Source: Octopus sinensis
Taxonomy: Eukaryota
Direction of reading: 5' to 3'
Assembly: GCF_006345805.1 (NCBI RefSeq)
Contig: NW_021832285.1
Coordinates: 1 to 37,228 of the forward strand
DNA length: 37,228 nt
Shown here: piece by piece, positions 1 through 12,248 of the stretch
Layout of the letters: each line of letters starts with the position of its first letter
How positions within the stretch are numbered: the first letter of the stretch is position 1
Program-made: the position numbers and the translations under genes
Notes under the pieces: generated by a model
Told to the model about the DNA's origin: nothing
Databases searched by the model: none
What the model saw: the letters and a program-made list of their open reading frames with translations, nothing else

Positions 1-490
1 CCCCGCTCACCATCGAAATAAACTCTGCCACCACCACCACCACCATCACCGCCACCGCTGACGCTGACGCTGACGCTGACGCCGCCGCCGCCGCCGCTGA
101 CATTGACGCCACCTCCATCGCTACCACCACCACCACCACCACCGTCGCCACCGCCACCACCAGCAACACCACCACCACCACCGCCACCGCCGCCGACGCT
201 GACGCTGACGCTAACGCCGCCGCCGCCGCCGCCACCTCCATCGCTACCACCACCACCGCCACCACCGGCGCCACCACCACCACCACCACCTTCACCACCA
301 CCATCGACGCCGCCACCACCAGCAACACACCCACCACCAATTCCACCGCGGCCGCGCCTCCTCCATCGCTACCCACCCAACCCCACCGACACACCTTCAC
401 CACCACCGTCGCCGCCGCCACCACCACCACCCACACCGCCAACAACCACTCCATTACCGCCATCATCATATCATCATCATCATCATCATC
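1..490. repeat. Compound CCA/CCG/GAC/CAT trinucleotide microsatellite
   Basis: direct inspection; source of the poly-Pro ORF. Confidence 0.95.
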
Positions 491-614
491 GTCAAATTAT
501 CGTGTCGTAATCTACTTTCTCTCTTTCCTCTTCTAATTCTTTATCCATAATATTTCCTCTTCTGTCACAAATTTCTTCCGTACAAGTTCCTCTTCACTCA
601 GTTTTATGTTTCAG

Positions 615-686
615 GGAATTGGGTGATAACAACCTCAACGAAATCAAGACAGGAACATTGAAAAGTCTTCCAAGTTTAACAACTCT
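615..686 (+). CDS. LRR exon 1 (72 nt, phase 2-2): ELGDNNLNEIKTGTLKSLPSLTTL
   Basis: ttttatgtttcag acceptor, GTAAGT donor, 24-aa typical LRR consensus. Confidence 0.92.
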
Positions 687-726
687 GTAAGTTGAATCAG
701 TTTTTCTTTATAGTACTTCATTGATG

Positions 727-1108
727 GTGGAGGCGCAAAGGCCCAGTGGTTAGGGCAGCGGACTCGCGGTCATAGGATCGCGGTTTCGATTCCCAGACCG
801 GGCGCTGTGAGTGTTTATTGAGCGAAAACACCTAAAGCTCCACGAGGCTCCAGCAGGTGGTTGTGGTGATCCCTGCTGTACTCTTTCACCACAACCTTCT
901 CTCACTCTTACTTTCTGTTTCTGTTGTACCTGTATTTCAAGGGGCCGGCCTTGTCACTCTCTGTGTCACGCTGAATATCCCCGAGAACTACGTTAAGGGT
1001 ACACGTGTCTGTGGAGTGCTCAGCCACTTACACGTTAATTTCACGAGCAGGCTGTTCCGTTGATCGGATCAACCGGAACCCTCATCGTCGTAACCGACGG
1101 AGTGCTTC
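727..1108 (+). mobile_element. tRNA-like SINE family C
   Basis: A/B-box-like head (tggcccagtggttagg..ggtttcgattccc); TSD tacttcattgatg at 714-726 and 1109-1121; four copies in window. Confidence 0.9.
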
Positions 1109-1309
1109 TACTTCATTGATGACATATCTCTAAATATGTAATGCCTTCATCTCCTCCATTTGAAGCTCTCTCGCTTGCCTTTCTTTATAGTATTAAATGT
1201 TAAATGATTGCGTCTTCGCTATTGTTTATCTCAATGATATTTTGACAAAGAGCAAGTCAGTGGAGAGACACTTCGAAGGTATTGAAAAAGTATTCGGAAA
1301 AATAAATAG

Positions 1310-2139
1310 GTGTAGGAGTGGCTGTGTGGTAAGTAGCTTGGCGGCGAGCTGGCAGAAACGTTAGCACGCCGGGCGAAATGCGTAGCCGTATTTCGTCTGC
1401 CTTTACATTCTGAGTTCAAATTCCACCGAGGTCGACTTTGCCTTTCATCCTTTCGGGGTCGATTAAATAAGTACCAGTTACGTACTGGAGTCGATGTAAT
1501 CGATTTAATCCGTTTGTCTGTCCTTGTTTGTCCATTCTGTGTTTAGCCCCTTGTGGGCAGTAAAGAAAGAGGTAAGTAGCTTGCTTACCAACCACATGGT
1601 TCTGGGTTCAGTCCCACTGCGTGGAATCTTGGGTAAGTGTCTTCTAGTATAGCCTCGGGCCGACCAATGCCTTGTGAGTGGATTTGGTAGACGGAAACTG
1701 AAAGAAGCCCATCATATATATAGGCATAGGAGTGGCTGTGTTGTAAGCAGCTTGCTTACCAACCACATGGTTCTGGGTTCAGTCCCACTGCGTGGCATCT
1801 TGGGCAAGTGTCTTCCGCTATAGCCTCGGGCCGACCAATGCCTTGTGAGTGGATTTGGTAGACGGAAACTGAAAGAAGCCTGTCGTATATATGTGTATAT
1901 ATGTATATGTGTATGTGTATGTATATGTTTGTGTGTCTGTGTTTGTCCCCCTAGCATTGCTTGATAACCGATGCTGGTGTGTTTACGTCCCCGTCACTTA
2001 GCGGTTCGGCAAAAAGAGACCGATAGAATAAGTACTGGGCTTACAAAGAATAAGTCCCGGGGTCGAGTTTCTCGACTAAAGGCGGTGCTCCAGCATGGCC
2101 ACAGTCAAATGACCGTAACAAGTAAAAGAGTAAAAGAGA
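1310..2139 (+). mobile_element. Two tandem SINE family B copies; the first is truncated and interrupted by a SINE-A
   Basis: ggagtggctgtgtggtaagtagc head, ggttcagtcccac B-box-like motif, internal TA/TG microsatellite, aaaagag tail. Confidence 0.88.
1341..1570 (+). mobile_element. SINE family A nested in SINE-B
   Basis: 13-bp TSD ggtaagtagcttg at 1328-1340 and 1571-1583. Confidence 0.9.
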
Positions 2140-2140
2140 A

Positions 2141-2910
2141 TACAGGTTTAGATTAGCAGAGGCACAATGTGAATTTTTGATGAAATAAAATCAAACAGCT
2201 CGGTCAAGTAATCGACAAAAGGGGGCGAAACCAGACCCTTCAAGTGCGACGACAATACGGAATATGCTTTCCCTAATAAACGTCAAATTGTTACAAGCAT
2301 TTTTAGATTGGTAATCTACTATCGAGTATATATCTCAAACGTACACAACATAAGTGCTCCACTGAACGAGCTGTTAAAAACGGATACCAAATGGTTTGTG
2401 GAGGCGCAATGGCCCAGTGGTTAGGTGTTTCGCTCATAAACACACACATCACCCTGTCTGAGATTAGAACCTGCGATCCCTCGACCGCGAGTCCGCTGCT
2501 CTAACCACTAAGCCATGTGCCGCCGCATTATATATGGCATAAAAAATTCCGCAGCTTTATACATGTTGGATGGTGTAGACTACAAACAAACCATCACCCA
2601 TTGCTAACGAGTTTTGGATCCAAGAAAGGCATTCCAGTACATTCAGCAAATGGGTTGCAGCGATGAGGCACCATATTATTAAACTACGACTTTGCAATGG
2701 AATATTTACCTTCGAAAACGTTAGGACAAGTTGACGGCCTAAACAAGTTAATACCCAGAAATGGTGGACCATTTGAGGACGCAGTAATAGCATCCTTAAG
2801 AGCCGAAGGGGAAATTAAACACATAACGTGGAACATTGTACAAGTGTTATCAATAACTCTGTAGGAGACGAAGTGATACGCATCGAAAGTTAATTTTATT
2901 AATGGAAGGA
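2141..2910 (+). mobile_element. Degenerate Ty3/Gypsy pol fragment (RT C-terminus to RNase H), interrupted by SINE heads at 2398-2521
   Basis: frameshifted translation YRFRLAEAQCEFL..LGQVIDKRG..PDP..LLQAFL..APLNELLK..KKFRSF..TNHHPLL..GSKKGIP..LQR*GTILLNYDF. Confidence 0.85.
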
Positions 2911-3093
2911 AAAATCTTTGTGGTCACCTAGTGAGAAGGAGAAGATAGTCAAAGACTATATAATATACATTCAACAATATAAAGAATGGCCATAATAGGC
3001 CATTCGACTCACTAGACAGAGCAGCCAAACTCAAACCGCTAAATAGTTGTAATTCTGAAATTGAAAGAGAAATAAAAACATTTATCCTTTTCA

Positions 3094-10124: not shown

Positions 10125-10310
10125 GGCGCTGGAGTGGGAGTGTCTGTGTAGTAAGAAGCTTGCTTCCCAACCACATGGTTCCGGGTTCAGTTCCACTGCG
10201 TGGTACCTTGGGCATGTGTCTTCTGCTATAGCTTCGGGCCGACCAAAGCCTTGTGAGTGGTTTTGGTAGACAGAAACTGAAAGAAGCCCGTCGTGTATAT
10301 ATATATATAT
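10125..10310 (+). mobile_element. SINE-B 5' half
   Basis: head, B-box-like motif, ends in (TA)n. Confidence 0.82.
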
Positions 10311-10350
10311 ATATACTCTATTTAACTCTATTTATTTAACTATTATCATT

Positions 10351-10450
10351 AACCTGAAGATTGACTATAATTTTGAATCGAATTTATTTCAATTGAATTT
10401 AAAATTAATTGTAATTCGAATTTAATTGTAGCCATGAAACGTATGTAGTT
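10351..10450 (+). ncRNA. Degenerate hammerhead-like motif (Penelope-type relic)
   Basis: aac-CTGAAGA-ttgactataatt..aattgtagccat-GAAA-C-gtat-G-TA-gtt; stems partly mismatched. Confidence 0.45.
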
Positions 10451-11005
10451 TTTTACTTATTATATTATATAGTGATCATTCATTTTTATACTTTTTGAGA
10501 TCCAGTTATAAGTTTTATGTTTTATAAAAATATATATTATTTGTTATTTATGTTTTAGTTTATGTCTATCACTGTTTGGGTTGCATAATAGTGGTTTTAT
10601 CTCTAATTTATATATATATATATTATATATATATATATAATATATATATTATATATATATATATGTATAGATATATATATTATATATATATGTATATATA
10701 TATATATGTATAGATATATATATATATACTGGTTTTTAAGCTAGTATACAACTTGTAAGCAACTGACCCTGGACAGGAAGATCTGTAAACAGATTTCTGA
10801 CTTGTTTTGGAGAATATGTTGCTGTTGCTTTTTCCAGAGTCATATCCCCATGGTGATCATATTCGTCGCAGAAATCATGGAAAAAAAATCGCCGAATACA
10901 ATCGCAGGAATAAAAACATAGGAATCCAAAATTTTAGGATTGCAGTTCCGGATTCGGCCCGGAATCACTCATGATTTATTTTTCTTGCAATGGTGTCACT
11001 GTATT

Positions 11006-11419
11006 TATTTCTTTATTGCTCACAAGGGGCTAAACACAGAGGGGACAAACAAGGTCAGGTAAACGGATTAAGTCGATTATATCGACCCCCAGTGCACAAC
11101 TGGTACTTAATTTATAGACACCGAAAGGATGAAAGGCAAAGTCGACCTCGGCGGAATTTGAACTCAGAACGTAACGGCAGACGAAATACCTATTTCTTTA
11201 CTGCCCACAAGGGGCTAAACACAGAGGGGACAAACAAGGACAGACAAACGGATTAAGCCGATTATATCAACCCCAGTGCACAACTGGTACTTATTTAATC
11301 GACCCCGAAAGGATGAAAGGCAAAGTCGACCTCGGCGGAATTTGAACTCAGAACGTAACGGCAGACGAAATACCGCTAAGCATTTCGCCCTGCATACTAA
11401 TGATTGTGCCAGCTCACCG
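11006..11419 (-). mobile_element. SINE-A dimer (head + 2 bodies)
   Basis: body junction aaatag|gtatttcg. Confidence 0.88.
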
Positions 11420-11709
11420 CTCTTTGTTGCCATCATATTGCCACTGGAGTAGATATGGAATGTAATATTTGTACAGTAGATGAGAATATTACGTAAAATC
11501 CATATTGTGCACACAACCAAGTCTCGTTGTAATTCTTACGGCTTATCTTCCATCTTTTGGTACCCGGGTATCATATAAGACTTTTGCTTTCCTTAGGATG
11601 GTAACTACTCCTGTCCAATCTATGCAGACAGAAAAATCATAGAGAAATAAATAACTTTACTGTGAACACGAGCATTTATTCGGTTAGTTTAGACAATATT
11701 AGTTAATTT

Positions 11710-12100
11710 AGGCGCAGGAGTGGCTGTGTGGTAAGTAGCTTGTTTACCAGCCACATGGTTCCGGGTTCAGTCCCACTGCGTGGCATCTTGGGCAAGTGTC
11801 TTCTACTATAGCCTCGGGCCGACCAAAGCCTTGTGAGTGGATTTGGTAGACGGAAACTGAAAGAAGCCCGTCGTATATATGTATATATATGTATGTGCGT
11901 GTATGTTTGTGTGTCTGTGTTTGTCCCCCTAGCATTGCTTGACAACCGATGCTGGTGTGTTTATGTCCCTGTCACTTAGCGGTTCGGCAAAAGAGACCGA
12001 TAGAATAAGTACTGGGCTTACAAATAAGTCCCGGGGTCGAGTTGCTCGATTAAAGGCGGTGCTCGAGCATGGCCGCAGTCAAAATGACTGAAACAAGTTA
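11710..12100 (+). mobile_element. SINE-B, full length
   Basis: head to tail match with other copies. Confidence 0.9.
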
Positions 12101-12176
12101 AAAAAAGATATATAAAAATAGGAAAAGATTAAACTTGTACGTATTTTAACTCAAAATATTTGTTTCATTCTTCCAG

Positions 12177-12248
12177 ATATTTGAGGAACAACCGAATACA
12201 AAACTTTGAGGATGGCACCTTCTTATTCCTTCCCAGTTTAACTAAGAT
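12177..12248 (+). CDS. LRR exon 6: YLRNNRIQNFEDGTFLFLPSLTKI
   Basis: tttcattcttccag acceptor, GTATGT donor, 72 nt, LRR consensus. Confidence 0.92.

What the first reader, a model, noticed from the sequence alone, without database searches (positions are those of the whole stretch)
490..12248. LRR array built by tandem duplication of whole exon+intron cassettes, with an A-B-C / A'-B'-C' super-repeat and diverging binding face
Seen: exons 1-5 share ~110 nt of upstream intron (ccataatattt..gtcaca..ctcaattttatgtt.cag) and exons 1-4 share ~60 nt downstream (gtaagttgaatcag..tcattcacga..aaatatgtaat). Each sits downstream of a CAT-rich tract. Exon 1 pairs with 4 (EIKTGT), 2 with 5 (WGN..AETF) and 3 weakly with 6 (LRNN). 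Hand counts: exon 1 vs 4 differ at 19/72 nt with 11 amino-acid changes and 3 purely synonymous codons; exon 2 vs 5 differ at 18/72 with 9 and 3. Established: symmetric 72-nt exons can be added or skipped in frame, and the xLxxN positions form the concave ligand face. Inference: a rapidly evolving modular recognition surface, with possible copy-number variation or combinatorial splicing loosely analogous to VLR-type diversity. The CAT tracts may seed unequal exchange.
Basis: partly seen in the sequence, partly recalled or inferred. Interest (0 to 1): 0.75.

Follow-up and report, generated by a model that had tools for sequence, protein, structure and literature searches.

The report
Octopus receptor's duplicated LRR exon cassettes
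An octopus adhesion-GPCR gene has built part of its leucine-rich-repeat ligand-binding domain by copying whole one-repeat exons together with their flanking intron, and the copies have changed fastest at the residues that face the ligand, a pattern known from brown-algal receptors but which I did not find described for an animal receptor.

Summary
The window is a 37-kb Octopus sinensis scaffold. It carries the 5' part of an octopus-specific adhesion GPCR: LRR array, LRRCT, a Ly6/uPAR-like domain, a linker, and the start of an HRM domain.

**Observation.** Largely correct. There are six 72-nt phase-1/1 LRR exons. Exons 1-5 sit in homologous cassettes of a (CAT)n tract, about 100 nt of intron, the exon, and about 55-60 nt of intron.

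**Super-repeat.** Only partly holds. The 2+5 pairing gets 87-90% bootstrap and 1+4 gets 63-73%. Exon 6 is not a C' copy. It is the family's ancestral terminal LRR and groups with a paralog's terminal exon at 100%.

**Diverging face.** Supported.
- In the window, concave-face codons differ at 0.54 per site, flanking intron at 0.22, scaffold codons at 0.12.
- Concave dN/dS is about 2.
- Two younger cassette arrays in a paralog give concave dN/dS of 3-12 (Fisher p about 1e-6 against intron).

**Splicing.** RefSeq lists 13 isoforms of one O. sinensis paralog that differ by whole 24-residue LRR units. The window's own model skips exon 5. Combinatorial splicing is therefore plausible but unproven here.

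**VLR analogy.** Nothing suggests VLR-like somatic assembly. The closest analog is brown-algal LRR-ROCO exon shuffling.

The parts
1..490 (.). CCA/CGC/CAT-type microsatellite block at the 5' end of the scaffold. The gene is truncated here, so the signal peptide, LRRNT and any further LRR exons lie off the contig.
   Evidence: Sequence. P0001 is annotated 'partial' and starts at exon 1. Paralogs start with signal peptide + LRRNT.
470..726 (+). Cassette 1: (CAT)n tract, upstream flank, LRR exon 1 (615-686; ELGDNNLNEIKTGTLKSLPSLTTL), and the first part of the downstream flank. The flank continues at 1122 to about 1290 after a SINE.
727..1121 (.). tRNA-derived SINE inserted into the downstream flank of cassette 1. 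Target-site duplication CTTCATTGATG at 716-726 and 1111-1121.
3925..4195 (+). Cassette 2: short (CAT)n tract, upstream flank, LRR exon 2 (4065-4136; SLWGNAIKEISAETFQNLKSLSTL), and a 59-nt downstream flank.
4196..5021 (+). Cassette 3: expanded (CAT)n satellite (about 4196-4760), upstream flank, LRR exon 3 (4885-4956; NLRNNIIAEIKPDTFQSLSRLKIL), and downstream flank.
7425..8089 (+). Cassette 4: (CAT)n tract, upstream flank interrupted by a SINE (7518-7905; TSD TTAATATTC), LRR exon 4 (7958-8029; NLGGNNIKEIKTGTFQHLTRLIYL), and downstream flank.
9485..9860 (+). Cassette 5: degenerate CAT tract, upstream flank, LRR exon 5 (9628-9699; SIWGNYITELNAETFRNLSSLSDI), and a downstream flank with an insertion of about 96 nt (9714-9809). 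The RefSeq model omits this exon.
12177..12248 (+). LRR exon 6 (YLRNNRIQNFEDGTFLFLPSLTKI). This is the conserved terminal LRR of the family, with its own unrelated introns. It is not a member of the amplified cassette family.
   Evidence: 100% bootstrap with L003 exon 54505-54576; the motif EDGAFLFLPS recurs in paralogs.
16013..16182 (+). LRRCT cap exon (DLKENRDMRCGCHLPALV...ECQ...FSQCQ).
   Evidence: AF2 pLDDT is 85-98 for residues 1-170. Structural neighbours are LRR+LRRCT ectodomains.
21612..21703 (+). First exon of the Cys-rich Ly6/uPAR-like (three-finger-like) domain.
   Evidence: (LYPD1 E=0.06; activin receptor ectodomain and candoxin are weak hits).
26858..27041 (+). Second exon of the Ly6/uPAR-like domain, ending in CCTGNLCN.
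29133..29209 (+). Linker exon (GSNNSFVFHLIFNSILKKSNEDIARS).
29896..29948 (+). Linker exon (MEHELSYLTGTFEVAYCG). The O. vulgaris ortholog model P0028 starts here.
31117..31274 (+). Linker exon. Together with the two before it, it folds as a confident beta-alpha-beta-beta-alpha unit in AF2.
33152..33266 (+). Start of the hormone-receptor (HRM) domain. GAIN/GPS and 7TM lie beyond the scaffold.
   Evidence: HRM E=0.022, partial domain. (the ortholog continues into GPS; a 7tm_2 gene fragment lies downstream).

Best explanation
Region 490-12248 encodes six leucine-rich repeats of the ectodomain of an octopus-specific adhesion GPCR. The domain order is LRR array, LRRCT, Ly6/uPAR-like domain, linker, HRM, then GAIN/GPS and 7TM, which lie off the contig. 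Each LRR is one 72-nt exon in phase 1 at both ends.

**Shown.** Exons 1-5 are paralogous copies of one cassette: a trinucleotide microsatellite, about 100 nt of intron, the exon, and about 55-60 nt of intron. The cassette was amplified in tandem inside this gene. Exon 6 is the older terminal LRR, shared with paralogs.

**Inferred.**
- Amplification went through unequal homologous exchange or replication slippage between neighbouring cassettes.
- The order A-B-C-A'-B' suggests that at least one step copied a two-exon block.
- All steps happened within a short interval, because intron distances are star-like at about 0.21. That is about 15 times the O. sinensis-O. vulgaris divergence.

**Shown.** After duplication the scaffold residues (L6, N9, I11, I14, F19, L22, L1) stayed fixed. 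The solvent-exposed residues of the beta-strand face (x3, x5, x7, x8, also x10 and x2) changed about 2.5 times faster than flanking intron and about 2 times faster than synonymous sites.

**Inferred.** This is diversifying selection on the concave ligand-binding surface. Each new repeat adds a differently shaped patch to the binding surface.

**Shown for paralogs only.** Because the exons are symmetric, they can be left out in frame. RefSeq annotates many such isoforms.

**Inferred, low confidence for this gene.** Alternative inclusion, for example of exon 5, adds isoform diversity.
For: **Exons and reading frame**
- All 13 exons have AG/GT sites and give an uninterrupted 426-aa ORF.
- Pfam LRR_8 scores E=4e-35.
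- AF2 places beta-strands every 24 residues at x3-L4-x5, with pLDDT 85-98.

**Cassette homology**
- Homology runs through both introns, and the flank motifs are restricted to the five cassettes.
- Exon 6 groups with a paralog's terminal exon at 100% bootstrap.
- Bootstrap support for 2+5 is 87-90% and for 1+4 is 63-73%.

**Rates of change in the window**
- Mean pairwise differences are concave 0.54, other x 0.37, intron 0.22 and scaffold 0.12.
- Variable columns are concave 16/18 against intron 42/126, p=8.5e-6.
- Against splice-distal intron only (46/116) the test still gives p=8.7e-5.
- An exact test of the six concave codons against all 6-codon sets gives P=0.0016, and P=0.019 among non-scaffold codons.
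- Pooled NG86 gives concave dN 1.07-1.10 against exon dS 0.55.

**Independent replication in paralogs**
- L002 K and N cassettes have concave columns variable at 12/18 and 14/18, against intron 19/152 and 37/159 (p=1.6e-6 and 7.6e-6). Concave dN/dS is 3-12.
- The L003 cassette clade gives p=1.4e-4.
- The same hypervariable positions appear in all four cassette groups.

**Within-gene origin**
- The window's flank motifs are absent from L002.
- Intron trees cluster by gene.
- Within-window flank distance is 0.20-0.21. Window-to-L003 distance is 0.22-0.41. Four-fold sites between the two genes differ at 0.25.

**Isoforms and gene identity**
- One O. sinensis paralog has 13 RefSeq isoforms of 409/385/361/337 aa that differ by whole LRR units. 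Similar 24-aa ladders occur in O. vulgaris and O. bimaculoides.
- P0001 lacks exon 5.
- The O. vulgaris locus is collinear at 98.3-98.8% and continues into GPS and 7tm_2.
- The family matches the octopus-specific adhesion GPCR expansion of Ritschard et al. 2019 (PMC6408891).
Against: - **Weak pairwise signal.** In the closest window pairs (1 vs 4, 2 vs 5) the excess is not significant. Whole-exon dN/dS is 0.70, and concave vs intron gives p=0.13 and 0.56. The window signal therefore comes mainly from older A/B/C differences and from only 18 concave nucleotide columns.
- **Non-independent data.** Pairwise comparisons share history. The Fisher tests treat columns as independent.
- **Imperfect neutral proxy.** Intron flanks next to splice sites may be constrained, which would inflate the ratio. 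dS (0.42-0.55) is higher than the intron distance (about 0.25).
- **Introns and exons disagree.** Introns alone do not resolve 1+4 and 2+5. In the 22-cassette tree they group 2+3 at 91%, and in the 5-taxon analysis at 37%.
- **No direct splicing evidence.** There is no transcript evidence for this gene. The paralog isoform ladders could partly be short-read junction artefacts among near-identical exons.
- **Mechanism not observed.** The duplication mechanism is inferred, not seen.
Confidence: 0.78

Rival explanations
1. Concerted evolution. The cassettes are old. Their introns and most of each exon are kept alike within a gene by repeated gene conversion or unequal exchange. Selection stops the concave-face codons from being homogenised.
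For: Intron trees cluster cassettes by gene and are star-like within the window. In L002, intron and non-concave codons are 91-95% alike while concave codons differ by 40%, which is the mosaic such a process would leave. The A-type window exons (xLGxNN..EIKTGTF) resemble the N-type exons of paralogs (GLGDNNIATIKEGTF). That hints that exon types are older than the flanks suggest.
Against: Conversion tracts would have to skip patches of 2-4 codons at both ends of a 72-nt exon again and again. The window's flank distances (0.20-0.21) are close to the neutral divergence between genes (four-fold sites 0.25), so no recent homogenisation is needed here. This rival still requires diversifying selection on the same residues, so it changes the history and not the functional reading.
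Confidence: 0.15
2. The shared flanks are conserved intronic splicing-control elements rather than marks of recent duplication. The array is ancient and the flanks are held by purifying selection because the exons are alternatively spliced.
For: The first 14 intron bases (GTAAGTTGAATCAG) are almost invariant. The 60-nt downstream flank is as similar between the window and L003 cassettes (0.22) as within each gene (0.20 and 0.16), while exons differ by 0.37. Paralogs have annotated alternative inclusion.
Against: The K and N cassettes of L002 and L007 have entirely different flanks, so there is no family-wide element. Between-gene flank divergence (0.22-0.41) lies within the range for flanks of constitutive exons (15-53% different) and near the four-fold-site divergence of 0.25. 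Cassettes show no excess RNA structure, with z between -1.1 and +0.8, and no shared fold.
Confidence: 0.1
3. Relaxed constraint. The exons are drifting or decaying, so the high non-synonymous divergence is neutral and not adaptive.
For: Whole-exon dN/dS is 0.7-0.9. The RefSeq model drops exon 5. No LRR-part ortholog is annotated in O. vulgaris or O. bimaculoides.
Against: All six exons keep an open frame, exact 72-nt length, AG/GT sites and every scaffold residue. Scaffold dN is 0.13 against dS 0.55, and concave dN exceeds both dS and the intron distance. The excess sits at structurally defined positions in four independent arrays.
Confidence: 0.04
4. Assembly artefact. The repeated cassettes are mis-assembled copies on a short unplaced scaffold.
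For: The window is an unplaced 37-kb scaffold rich in microsatellites and SINE arrays.
Against: The cassettes differ from each other by 20-39% and carry private SINE insertions with target-site duplications. The 3' 15 kb is collinear with an O. vulgaris chromosome at 98.3-98.8%. The same architecture appears in chromosome-level O. vulgaris loci.
Confidence: 0.02

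Closest known systems
Brown-algal (Ectocarpus, Saccharina) LRR-ROCO receptors with LRR exon shuffling (Zambounis et al. 2012, PMC3341825; Teng et al. 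2024, PMC11378527)
   Same: One LRR per 72-nt (24-aa) symmetric exon. Repetitive exon-intron structure and variable repeat number among recent paralogs. Positively selected sites on the concave face. Alternative splicing of tandem LRR exons.
   Different: The algal proteins are cytoplasmic ROC-COR GTPases, and their exons are described as 'phase 0'. Intact or inactivated LRR exons lie scattered in their introns on both strands, which led to a proposal of somatic recombination. In the window all cassettes are on the coding strand, all are intact, and there are no orphan copies. The octopus protein is a metazoan cell-surface adhesion GPCR. The two systems are unrelated by descent.
Octopus-specific adhesion GPCR expansion, 'group 3' of Ritschard et al. 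2019 (PMC6408891)
   Same: Same kind of gene: co-localised, octopus-restricted adhesion GPCRs. Some carry LRRs and show gene-level positive selection. Expression is reported in axial nerve cord, suckers and skin. All strong hits to the window protein are from Octopus species.
   Different: That paper analysed the 7TM-based family tree. It mentions LRRs only as a domain found in 5 of 22 sequences. It does not describe exon cassettes, concave-face diversification or LRR isoform ladders. Whether this exact gene was in their set was not checked.
Exon-modular LRR genes of vertebrates (NLRP3 and other NLRs, Hoss et al. 2019, PMC6642158; from memory also LGR/glycoprotein-hormone receptors and Slit genes with 72-bp LRR exons)
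   Same: Strict one-repeat-per-exon modularity, which allows in-frame alternative splicing of LRRs (abstract). The window's LRR region resembles LGR4/5, Slit2, LRRTM2 and the Nogo receptor in sequence and fold.
   Different: In those genes the LRR exons are ancient and the introns are unrelated to one another. There is no recent cassette amplification and no burst of concave-face substitutions between neighbouring repeats.
Lamprey/hagfish variable lymphocyte receptors (VLR)
   Same: The LRR solenoid has diversity concentrated at the same concave positions (x2, x3, x5, x7, x8, x10). VLR-derived repebodies are among the structural neighbours.
   Different: VLR diversity is made somatically, by copying non-spliceable flanking cassettes into an incomplete germline gene. 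Here every cassette is an ordinary germline exon with splice sites, and the diversity is evolutionary, plus possibly splicing-based.
Dscam1 / clustered protocadherin variable-exon arrays
   Same: Tandem arrays of duplicated, diversified exons encode the recognition surface of a neuronal cell-surface receptor. Paralogs have many isoforms.
   Different: Dscam uses mutually exclusive choice through docking and selector RNA pairing. Protocadherins use one promoter per variable exon. Here the isoforms differ by additive inclusion or skipping, no conserved RNA pairing was found, and no functional link to self-recognition exists.

Membership tests
Extracellular 'typical' 24-residue LRR domain with C-terminal cap | LxxLxLxxNxL consensus repeating every 24 residues | tested here: met
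   Pfam LRR_8 E=4.3e-35 and LRR_4 E=1.4e-21. Scaffold residues are conserved in all six exons. AF2 strands lie at 23-25, 47-49, 71-73, 95-97 and 119-122.
Extracellular 'typical' 24-residue LRR domain with C-terminal cap | Cysteine-containing LRRCT cap after the last repeat | tested here: inconclusive
   The exon at 16013-16182 has the CxC...C...C pattern. It is confidently modelled and superposes on LRR+LRRCT structures. No Pfam LRRCT hit was returned.
Adhesion GPCR (class B2) | GAIN domain with GPS autoproteolysis motif | tested here: met
   Not in the window, because the scaffold ends first. The collinear O. vulgaris locus L001 (98.3-98.8% identity) encodes P0028 with PF01825 GPS and a weak GAIN_ADGRA3 hit.
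Adhesion GPCR (class B2) | Secretin-type seven-transmembrane domain (7tm_2) | tested here: inconclusive
   A 109-residue 7tm_2 gene fragment lies about 5 kb downstream of P0028 in L001. Paralogs P0033, P0034 and P0036 carry 7tm_2. Continuity of one transcript was not shown.
Adhesion GPCR (class B2) | HRM (hormone receptor) domain before GAIN | tested here: inconclusive
   Pfam HRM scores E=0.022 on the truncated exon 33152-33266, below the curated cut-off.
Exon-shuffled LRR receptors of the brown-algal ROCO type | Each LRR encoded by one symmetric 72-nt exon | tested here: met
   Paralog loci show the same.
Exon-shuffled LRR receptors of the brown-algal ROCO type | Diversifying selection on concave-face positions | tested here: met
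   The counting methods were simple, and no codeml site models were run.
Exon-shuffled LRR receptors of the brown-algal ROCO type | Orphan, inverted or inactivated LRR exons scattered in the introns | tested here: not met
   No LRR-like 72-nt exon on the minus strand and no extra flank motifs anywhere in the window.
Exon-shuffled LRR receptors of the brown-algal ROCO type | ROC-COR GTPase core | tested here: not met
   The domain order here is LRR, LRRCT, Ly6-like, HRM, GAIN. This is an analog, not a member.
VLR-type somatically assembled LRR receptors | Incomplete germline gene flanked by non-spliceable LRR donor cassettes in both orientations | tested here: not met
   All six LRR units are canonical AG/GT exons in one orientation within one ORF.
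Dscam-like mutually exclusive exon clusters | Conserved docking/selector RNA pairing and one-of-many exon choice | tested here: not met
   Cassette folds have z scores near 0 and no shared structure. Paralog isoforms carry variable numbers of LRR exons (337-409 aa), not one of many. Pairing between distant cassettes was not tested.
Ly6/uPAR three-finger domain | Eight to ten spaced cysteines ending in CCxxxxCN, with a three-finger fold | tested here: inconclusive
   The CCTGNLCN ending and a Cys ladder are present. The best PDB sequence hit is LYPD1 at E=0.06, followed by activin receptor ectodomain and candoxin. There is no Pfam hit. AF2 pLDDT is below 50 for residues 182-269.

The most novel reading that the evidence does not exclude
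Octopus LRR adhesion GPCRs form a germline-encoded, splicing-multiplied recognition repertoire. Arrays of up to about 16 diversified one-LRR exons per gene (L003) would be included in regulated or stochastic combinations. Neurons or sucker sensory cells would then display many different concave binding surfaces. This would be an LRR-based counterpart of Dscam or protocadherin diversity, evolved independently in a large-brained mollusc.
Probability: 0.15. Interest if true: 0.85.

Novelty: new variant of a known kind. Interest (0 to 1): 0.58.

Why it matters
Octopuses expanded a few receptor families, namely protocadherins and some GPCRs, that are suspected to underlie their nervous-system and sucker innovations. 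How new binding specificities arise within those families is not known.

This locus and its paralogs show a concrete route:
- copy a one-repeat exon together with its introns;
- keep the structural scaffold residues;
- change the ligand-facing residues quickly;
- optionally splice the repeats in or out.

The pattern gives specific, testable predictions. It names the residues that should set specificity (x3, x5, x7, x8) and the exons that should be alternative. It also points to genes whose current models probably omit many real exons. For example, P0025 uses 4 of 16 intact LRR exons.

The same design is known from brown-algal candidate immune receptors. Finding it in an animal adhesion GPCR suggests it is a general way to evolve LRR recognition surfaces.

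Tried and rejected
1. **Exon 3/6 pairing.** Rejected by distances and trees.
2. **Family-wide intronic element.** The window's flank motifs are absent from paralog L002. They are present in L003 at a divergence that fits neutral decay.
3. **Conserved RNA structure or editing-type duplex in the cassettes.** Minimum free energies are no lower than shuffles, with z from -1.1 to +0.8, and there is no common fold. The first attempt timed out.
4. **Fetching the O. vulgaris ortholog of the LRR array.**
   - P0028's 10-kb flank reaches back only to window position about 21.8 kb.
   - Four other genes on the same chromosome lie 0.2-1.5 Mb away.
   - No annotated protein covers the orthologous LRR exons.
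   - Copy number across species and upstream cassettes therefore could not be checked.
5. **Look-ups of P0008 and P0003.** No record was found.
6. **Structure prediction with the spliced six-exon protein.** The RefSeq protein P0001, which lacks exon 5, was modelled instead.
7. **Extra or inverted cassettes in the window.** None were found.
8. **Threonine/isoleucine mismatch at the exon 9/10 junction.** My canonical splice gives NNFTG and P0001 has NNFIG. This is unexplained and was not pursued.
9. **Literature search for a prior description in cephalopods.** Nothing was found beyond Ritschard 2019.

Full report
**What the window is**

The best database hit to the spliced translation is the window's own RefSeq model. 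It is 'slit homolog 1 protein-like, partial [Octopus sinensis]', P0001, 414 aa, on a contig of exactly 37,228 bp. All strong relatives come from O. sinensis, O. vulgaris and O. bimaculoides, and many are named 'adhesion G-protein coupled receptor G6-like'.

I could join 13 exons with canonical AG/GT sites into an uninterrupted 426-aa reading frame:
- six LRR exons;
- an LRRCT exon (16013-16182);
- two exons of a Cys-rich Ly6/uPAR-like domain (21612-21703 and 26858-27041);
- three linker exons;
- the start of an HRM domain (33152-33266).

The 3' 15 kb of the window is collinear with O. vulgaris chromosome OX597842.1 at 98.3-98.8% identity. There the gene continues into a GPS-containing product, with a 7tm_2 fragment downstream. 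The finding therefore lies in the 5' part of an adhesion GPCR gene. It belongs to the octopus-specific adhesion-GPCR expansion described by Ritschard et al. 2019 (PMC6408891). That paper noted LRRs in 5 of 22 members, co-localisation, positive selection, and expression in axial nerve cord, suckers and skin.

**Checking the observation**

A mechanical scan for AG + 72 nt + GT with an open LRR-like frame finds exactly six exons on the + strand and none on the - strand. They are 615-686, 4065-4136, 4885-4956, 7958-8029, 9628-9699 and 12177-12248. All are phase 1 at both ends.

Aligning each exon with its flanks shows clear homology outside the coding sequence for cassettes 1-5 but not for cassette 6. 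Two apparent interruptions are later SINE insertions with target-site duplications:
- 727-1121 in the downstream flank of cassette 1;
- 7518-7905 in the upstream flank of cassette 4.

Cassette 5 has an insertion of about 96 nt after its donor site. Once these are removed, cassettes 1-5 share a core of 97 nt upstream and 54 nt downstream.

The flank motifs occur only at these five exons, with 5 hits against 0.29 and 0.39 expected and 0 of 100 shuffles reaching 5. A (CAT)n tract lies 120-190 nt upstream of exons 1-4, a degenerate one lies before exon 5, and none lies before exon 6.

**The super-repeat**

Exon distances are as follows:

| Comparison | Differences out of 72 nt |
|---|---|
| 1 vs 4 | 19 |
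| 2 vs 5 | 18 |
| Other pairs among exons 1-5 | 22-28 |
| Exon 6 vs any other exon | 34-37 |

Exon 6 is therefore no closer to exon 3 (34) than to anything else.

In a joint tree with 16 LRR exons of a paralogous O. vulgaris gene (L003), exon 6 pairs with that gene's terminal LRR exon at 100% bootstrap, in exon and in intron. Its EDGxFLFLPS motif recurs as the last repeat of paralogs. Exon 6 is thus the ancestral terminal repeat and not a C' copy.

Bootstrap support among cassettes 1-5 is as follows:

| Data | 2+5 | 1+4 |
|---|---|---|
| Exon, 72 nt | 90% | 63% |
| Upstream intron, 97 nt | 46% | 65% |
| Downstream intron, 54 nt | none | none |
| All 223 columns | 87% | 73% |

Intron distances are nearly star-like at 0.19-0.26. 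The A-B/A'-B' block is plausible but only moderately supported. The duplications must have followed each other quickly.

**Origin of the flank similarity**

The window's flank motifs are absent from one paralog, L002. That gene nevertheless has the same architecture with its own flanks. It has ten LRR exons in two cassette types (K and N), each preceded by a (CTT)n tract, with introns 91-95% identical within a type.

A second paralog, L003, lies 220 kb from the window's ortholog on the same chromosome. It carries 16 intact LRR exons, at least ten of them with the window's flank family.

The distances are as follows:

| Comparison | Difference per site |
|---|---|
| Window cassette flanks, within the window (upstream / downstream) | 0.21 / 0.20 |
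| Window flanks vs L003 flanks (upstream / downstream) | 0.41 / 0.22 |
| The two genes at four-fold degenerate sites | 0.25 |
| Flanks of the two genes' constitutive exons | 0.15-0.53 |

The synonymous distance (dS) between the two genes is 0.50. Flank similarity is therefore compatible with neutral decay since duplication. Trees cluster cassettes by gene. I conclude that amplification occurred mostly within each gene, at about the time of or after the gene duplications.

For the window this is old relative to the 1.2-1.7% divergence between O. sinensis and O. vulgaris. It is still recent in other genes. For example, L003 exons 15201 and 18434 have 0/100 upstream differences.

**The binding face**

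I used the canonical LRR register. AF2 places the beta-strand at x3-L4-x5 every 24 residues, with pLDDT 85-98. I classed codons in three groups:
- concave: x5, x7, x8, x10, x2, x3;
- scaffold: L6, N9, L11, L14, F19, L22, L1;
- other.

Results for window cassettes 1-5:
- Mean pairwise differences are concave 0.54, other 0.37, intron 0.22 and scaffold 0.12.
- Variable columns are concave 16/18 against intron 42/126 (p=8.5e-6).
- Against splice-distal intron only (46/116), p=8.7e-5.
- The six concave codons are more variable than almost any other set of six codons. The exact P is 0.0016, or 0.019 among non-scaffold codons.
- Pooled NG86 gives concave dN 1.07-1.10 against exon dS 0.55, and scaffold dN 0.13.

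The closest pairs alone are underpowered. For 1+2 against 4+5, dN/dS is 0.70. Concave against intron gives p=0.13 and 0.56.

The younger arrays of L002 give a much cleaner picture:

| L002 cassette type | Concave variable columns | Intron variable columns | Fisher p | Concave dN / exon dS |
|---|---|---|---|---|
| K | 12/18 | 19/152 | 1.6e-6 | 7.8-12 |
| N | 14/18 | 37/159 | 7.6e-6 | 3.2-4.4 |

In both types the other x positions evolve at the intron rate. The L003 clade gives p=1.4e-4.

The per-codon profile peaks at x5, x7, x8 and x3 in all four independent groups. Diversifying selection on the ligand face is the best reading. A concerted-evolution variant, with homogenised introns and protected concave codons, remains possible. 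It still implies the same selection.

**Splicing**

The window's only RefSeq model goes from exon 4 straight to exon 6, although exon 5 is intact with good splice sites.

For one O. sinensis paralog (L007, scaffold VCDQ01004985.1), RefSeq lists 13 isoforms:
- Their lengths are 409, 385, 361 and 337 aa, in steps of exactly 24 aa.
- Four 5' LRR exons are alternatively included.
- Two further exons are each skipped in one isoform.
- Two intact exons are used in no isoform.

Ladders in 24-aa steps also occur in another O. sinensis gene (525/501/477), in O. vulgaris (489/465/441) and in O. bimaculoides (617/593). The O. vulgaris model P0025 uses only 4 of the 16 intact LRR exons at its locus.

This makes in-frame alternative use of LRR exons plausible for the family. 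These are computational models based on short reads over near-identical exons, and there is no transcript evidence for the window gene itself. I found no conserved RNA structure in the cassettes.

**Comparison with known systems**

- **Brown-algal LRR-ROCO family.** This is the closest described system. It has one LRR per 72-nt exon, exon shuffling, positive selection on the concave face and alternative splicing of tandem LRR exons (PMC3341825, PMC11378527). It differs in protein class, and in having orphan and inverted LRR exons in its introns, which are absent here.
- **Vertebrate LRR genes.** Exonic modularity that permits splicing is known (PMC6642158).
- **Fold.** The LRR region resembles LRRTM2, the Nogo receptor, Slit2, LGI1, LGR5 and VLR-based scaffolds.
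- **VLR-type somatic assembly.** Not supported. All units are ordinary exons in one orientation.
- **Prior description.** I found none of cassette amplification, concave-face diversification or LRR isoform ladders in cephalopod adhesion GPCRs.

**Verdict**

This is a real and well-defined feature. It is a new variant of a known kind, of moderate to good interest. The interest lies mainly in the family-wide pattern and in the possibility of a splicing-multiplied LRR repertoire in octopus sensory or nervous tissue.

Noticed in passing
window 9628-9699, 27035-27045 / 29125-29140, and 33267-33300: The RefSeq model P0001 omits the intact exon 5. It has Ile where canonical splicing of exons 9 and 10 gives Thr (NNFIG vs NNFTG). 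It ends by reading into the intron after the HRM exon (WFVSIVLFHIKL), whereas the O. vulgaris ortholog continues ...ATRYCSSRQ.
   Followed up: partly
L003 (O. vulgaris OX597842.1:13385770-13471213), exons at 13312-54576: The locus holds 16 intact 72-nt LRR exons but the annotated protein P0025 uses only 4 of them. Exons 15201 and 18434 are near-identical including their introns (0/100 upstream differences), which indicates a very recent duplication.
   Followed up: partly
L007 (O. sinensis VCDQ01004985.1), exons 24605-24676 and 27604-27675: Two intact K/N-type LRR exons with good splice sites are not included in any of the gene's 13 RefSeq isoforms. One unit seen in isoforms (YLSENNISTIKEG...) was not found by my exon scan.
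   Followed up: no
window 21612-21703 + 26858-27041; protein P0002: A Cys-rich Ly6/uPAR-like module ending in CCxxxLCN sits between LRRCT and the linker, which is unusual for an adhesion GPCR. Paralog P0002 carries three tandem copies of this module, so the two-exon module also duplicates in tandem.
   Followed up: partly
window 29133-31274 (P0001 residues about 270-360): AF2 folds the three linker exons into a confident (pLDDT 77-92) beta-alpha-beta-beta-alpha unit with no Pfam hit. It may be SEA-like, as in ADGRG6, but this was not tested by a domain-level fold search.
   Followed up: no
window 26236-26754 and 28098-28628: Inverted repeat arms of about 520 bp, 95% identical (506/531), flank the second Ly6 exon. 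They look like 3' fragments of a non-LTR retrotransposon ORF. Both arms are also present in O. vulgaris.
   Followed up: partly
window 5833-7354, 35349-37100; also about 11006-11428, 16756-17163 and 32055-32574: Long tandem arrays of a SINE-like unit of about 171-184 nt (…cgaccccgaaaggatgaaaggcaaagtcgacctcggcggaatttgaactcagaacg…) fill several introns. The array at the 3' end differs in copy register between O. sinensis and O. vulgaris.
   Followed up: no
window 721-1125, 7521-7890, 14049-14452, 25500-25885: Four copies of one tRNA-derived SINE (ggaggcgcaatggcccagtggttagg…). Two sit inside cassette flanks with clear target-site duplications, so they date to after the cassette duplications.
   Followed up: partly
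window 4196-4760, 5100-5570, 18500-19010, 19860-21560, 34330-34760: Very large trinucleotide microsatellites (CAT, CCA, ATT/ACT, ATC/GTC). In paralog L002 the tract at the same cassette position is (CTT)n rather than (CAT)n.
   Followed up: partly
window about 30330-30900: A mariner-like transposase remnant, with an open stretch containing ...HQDNARPHTAKIT..., lies in the intron between the linker exons.
   Followed up: no
window 19020-19580 vs 20160-20700: Two copies of a roughly 550-bp element in inverted orientation, each bordered by ATT/ATA-type microsatellites, lie inside the LRRCT-Ly6 intron.
   Followed up: no
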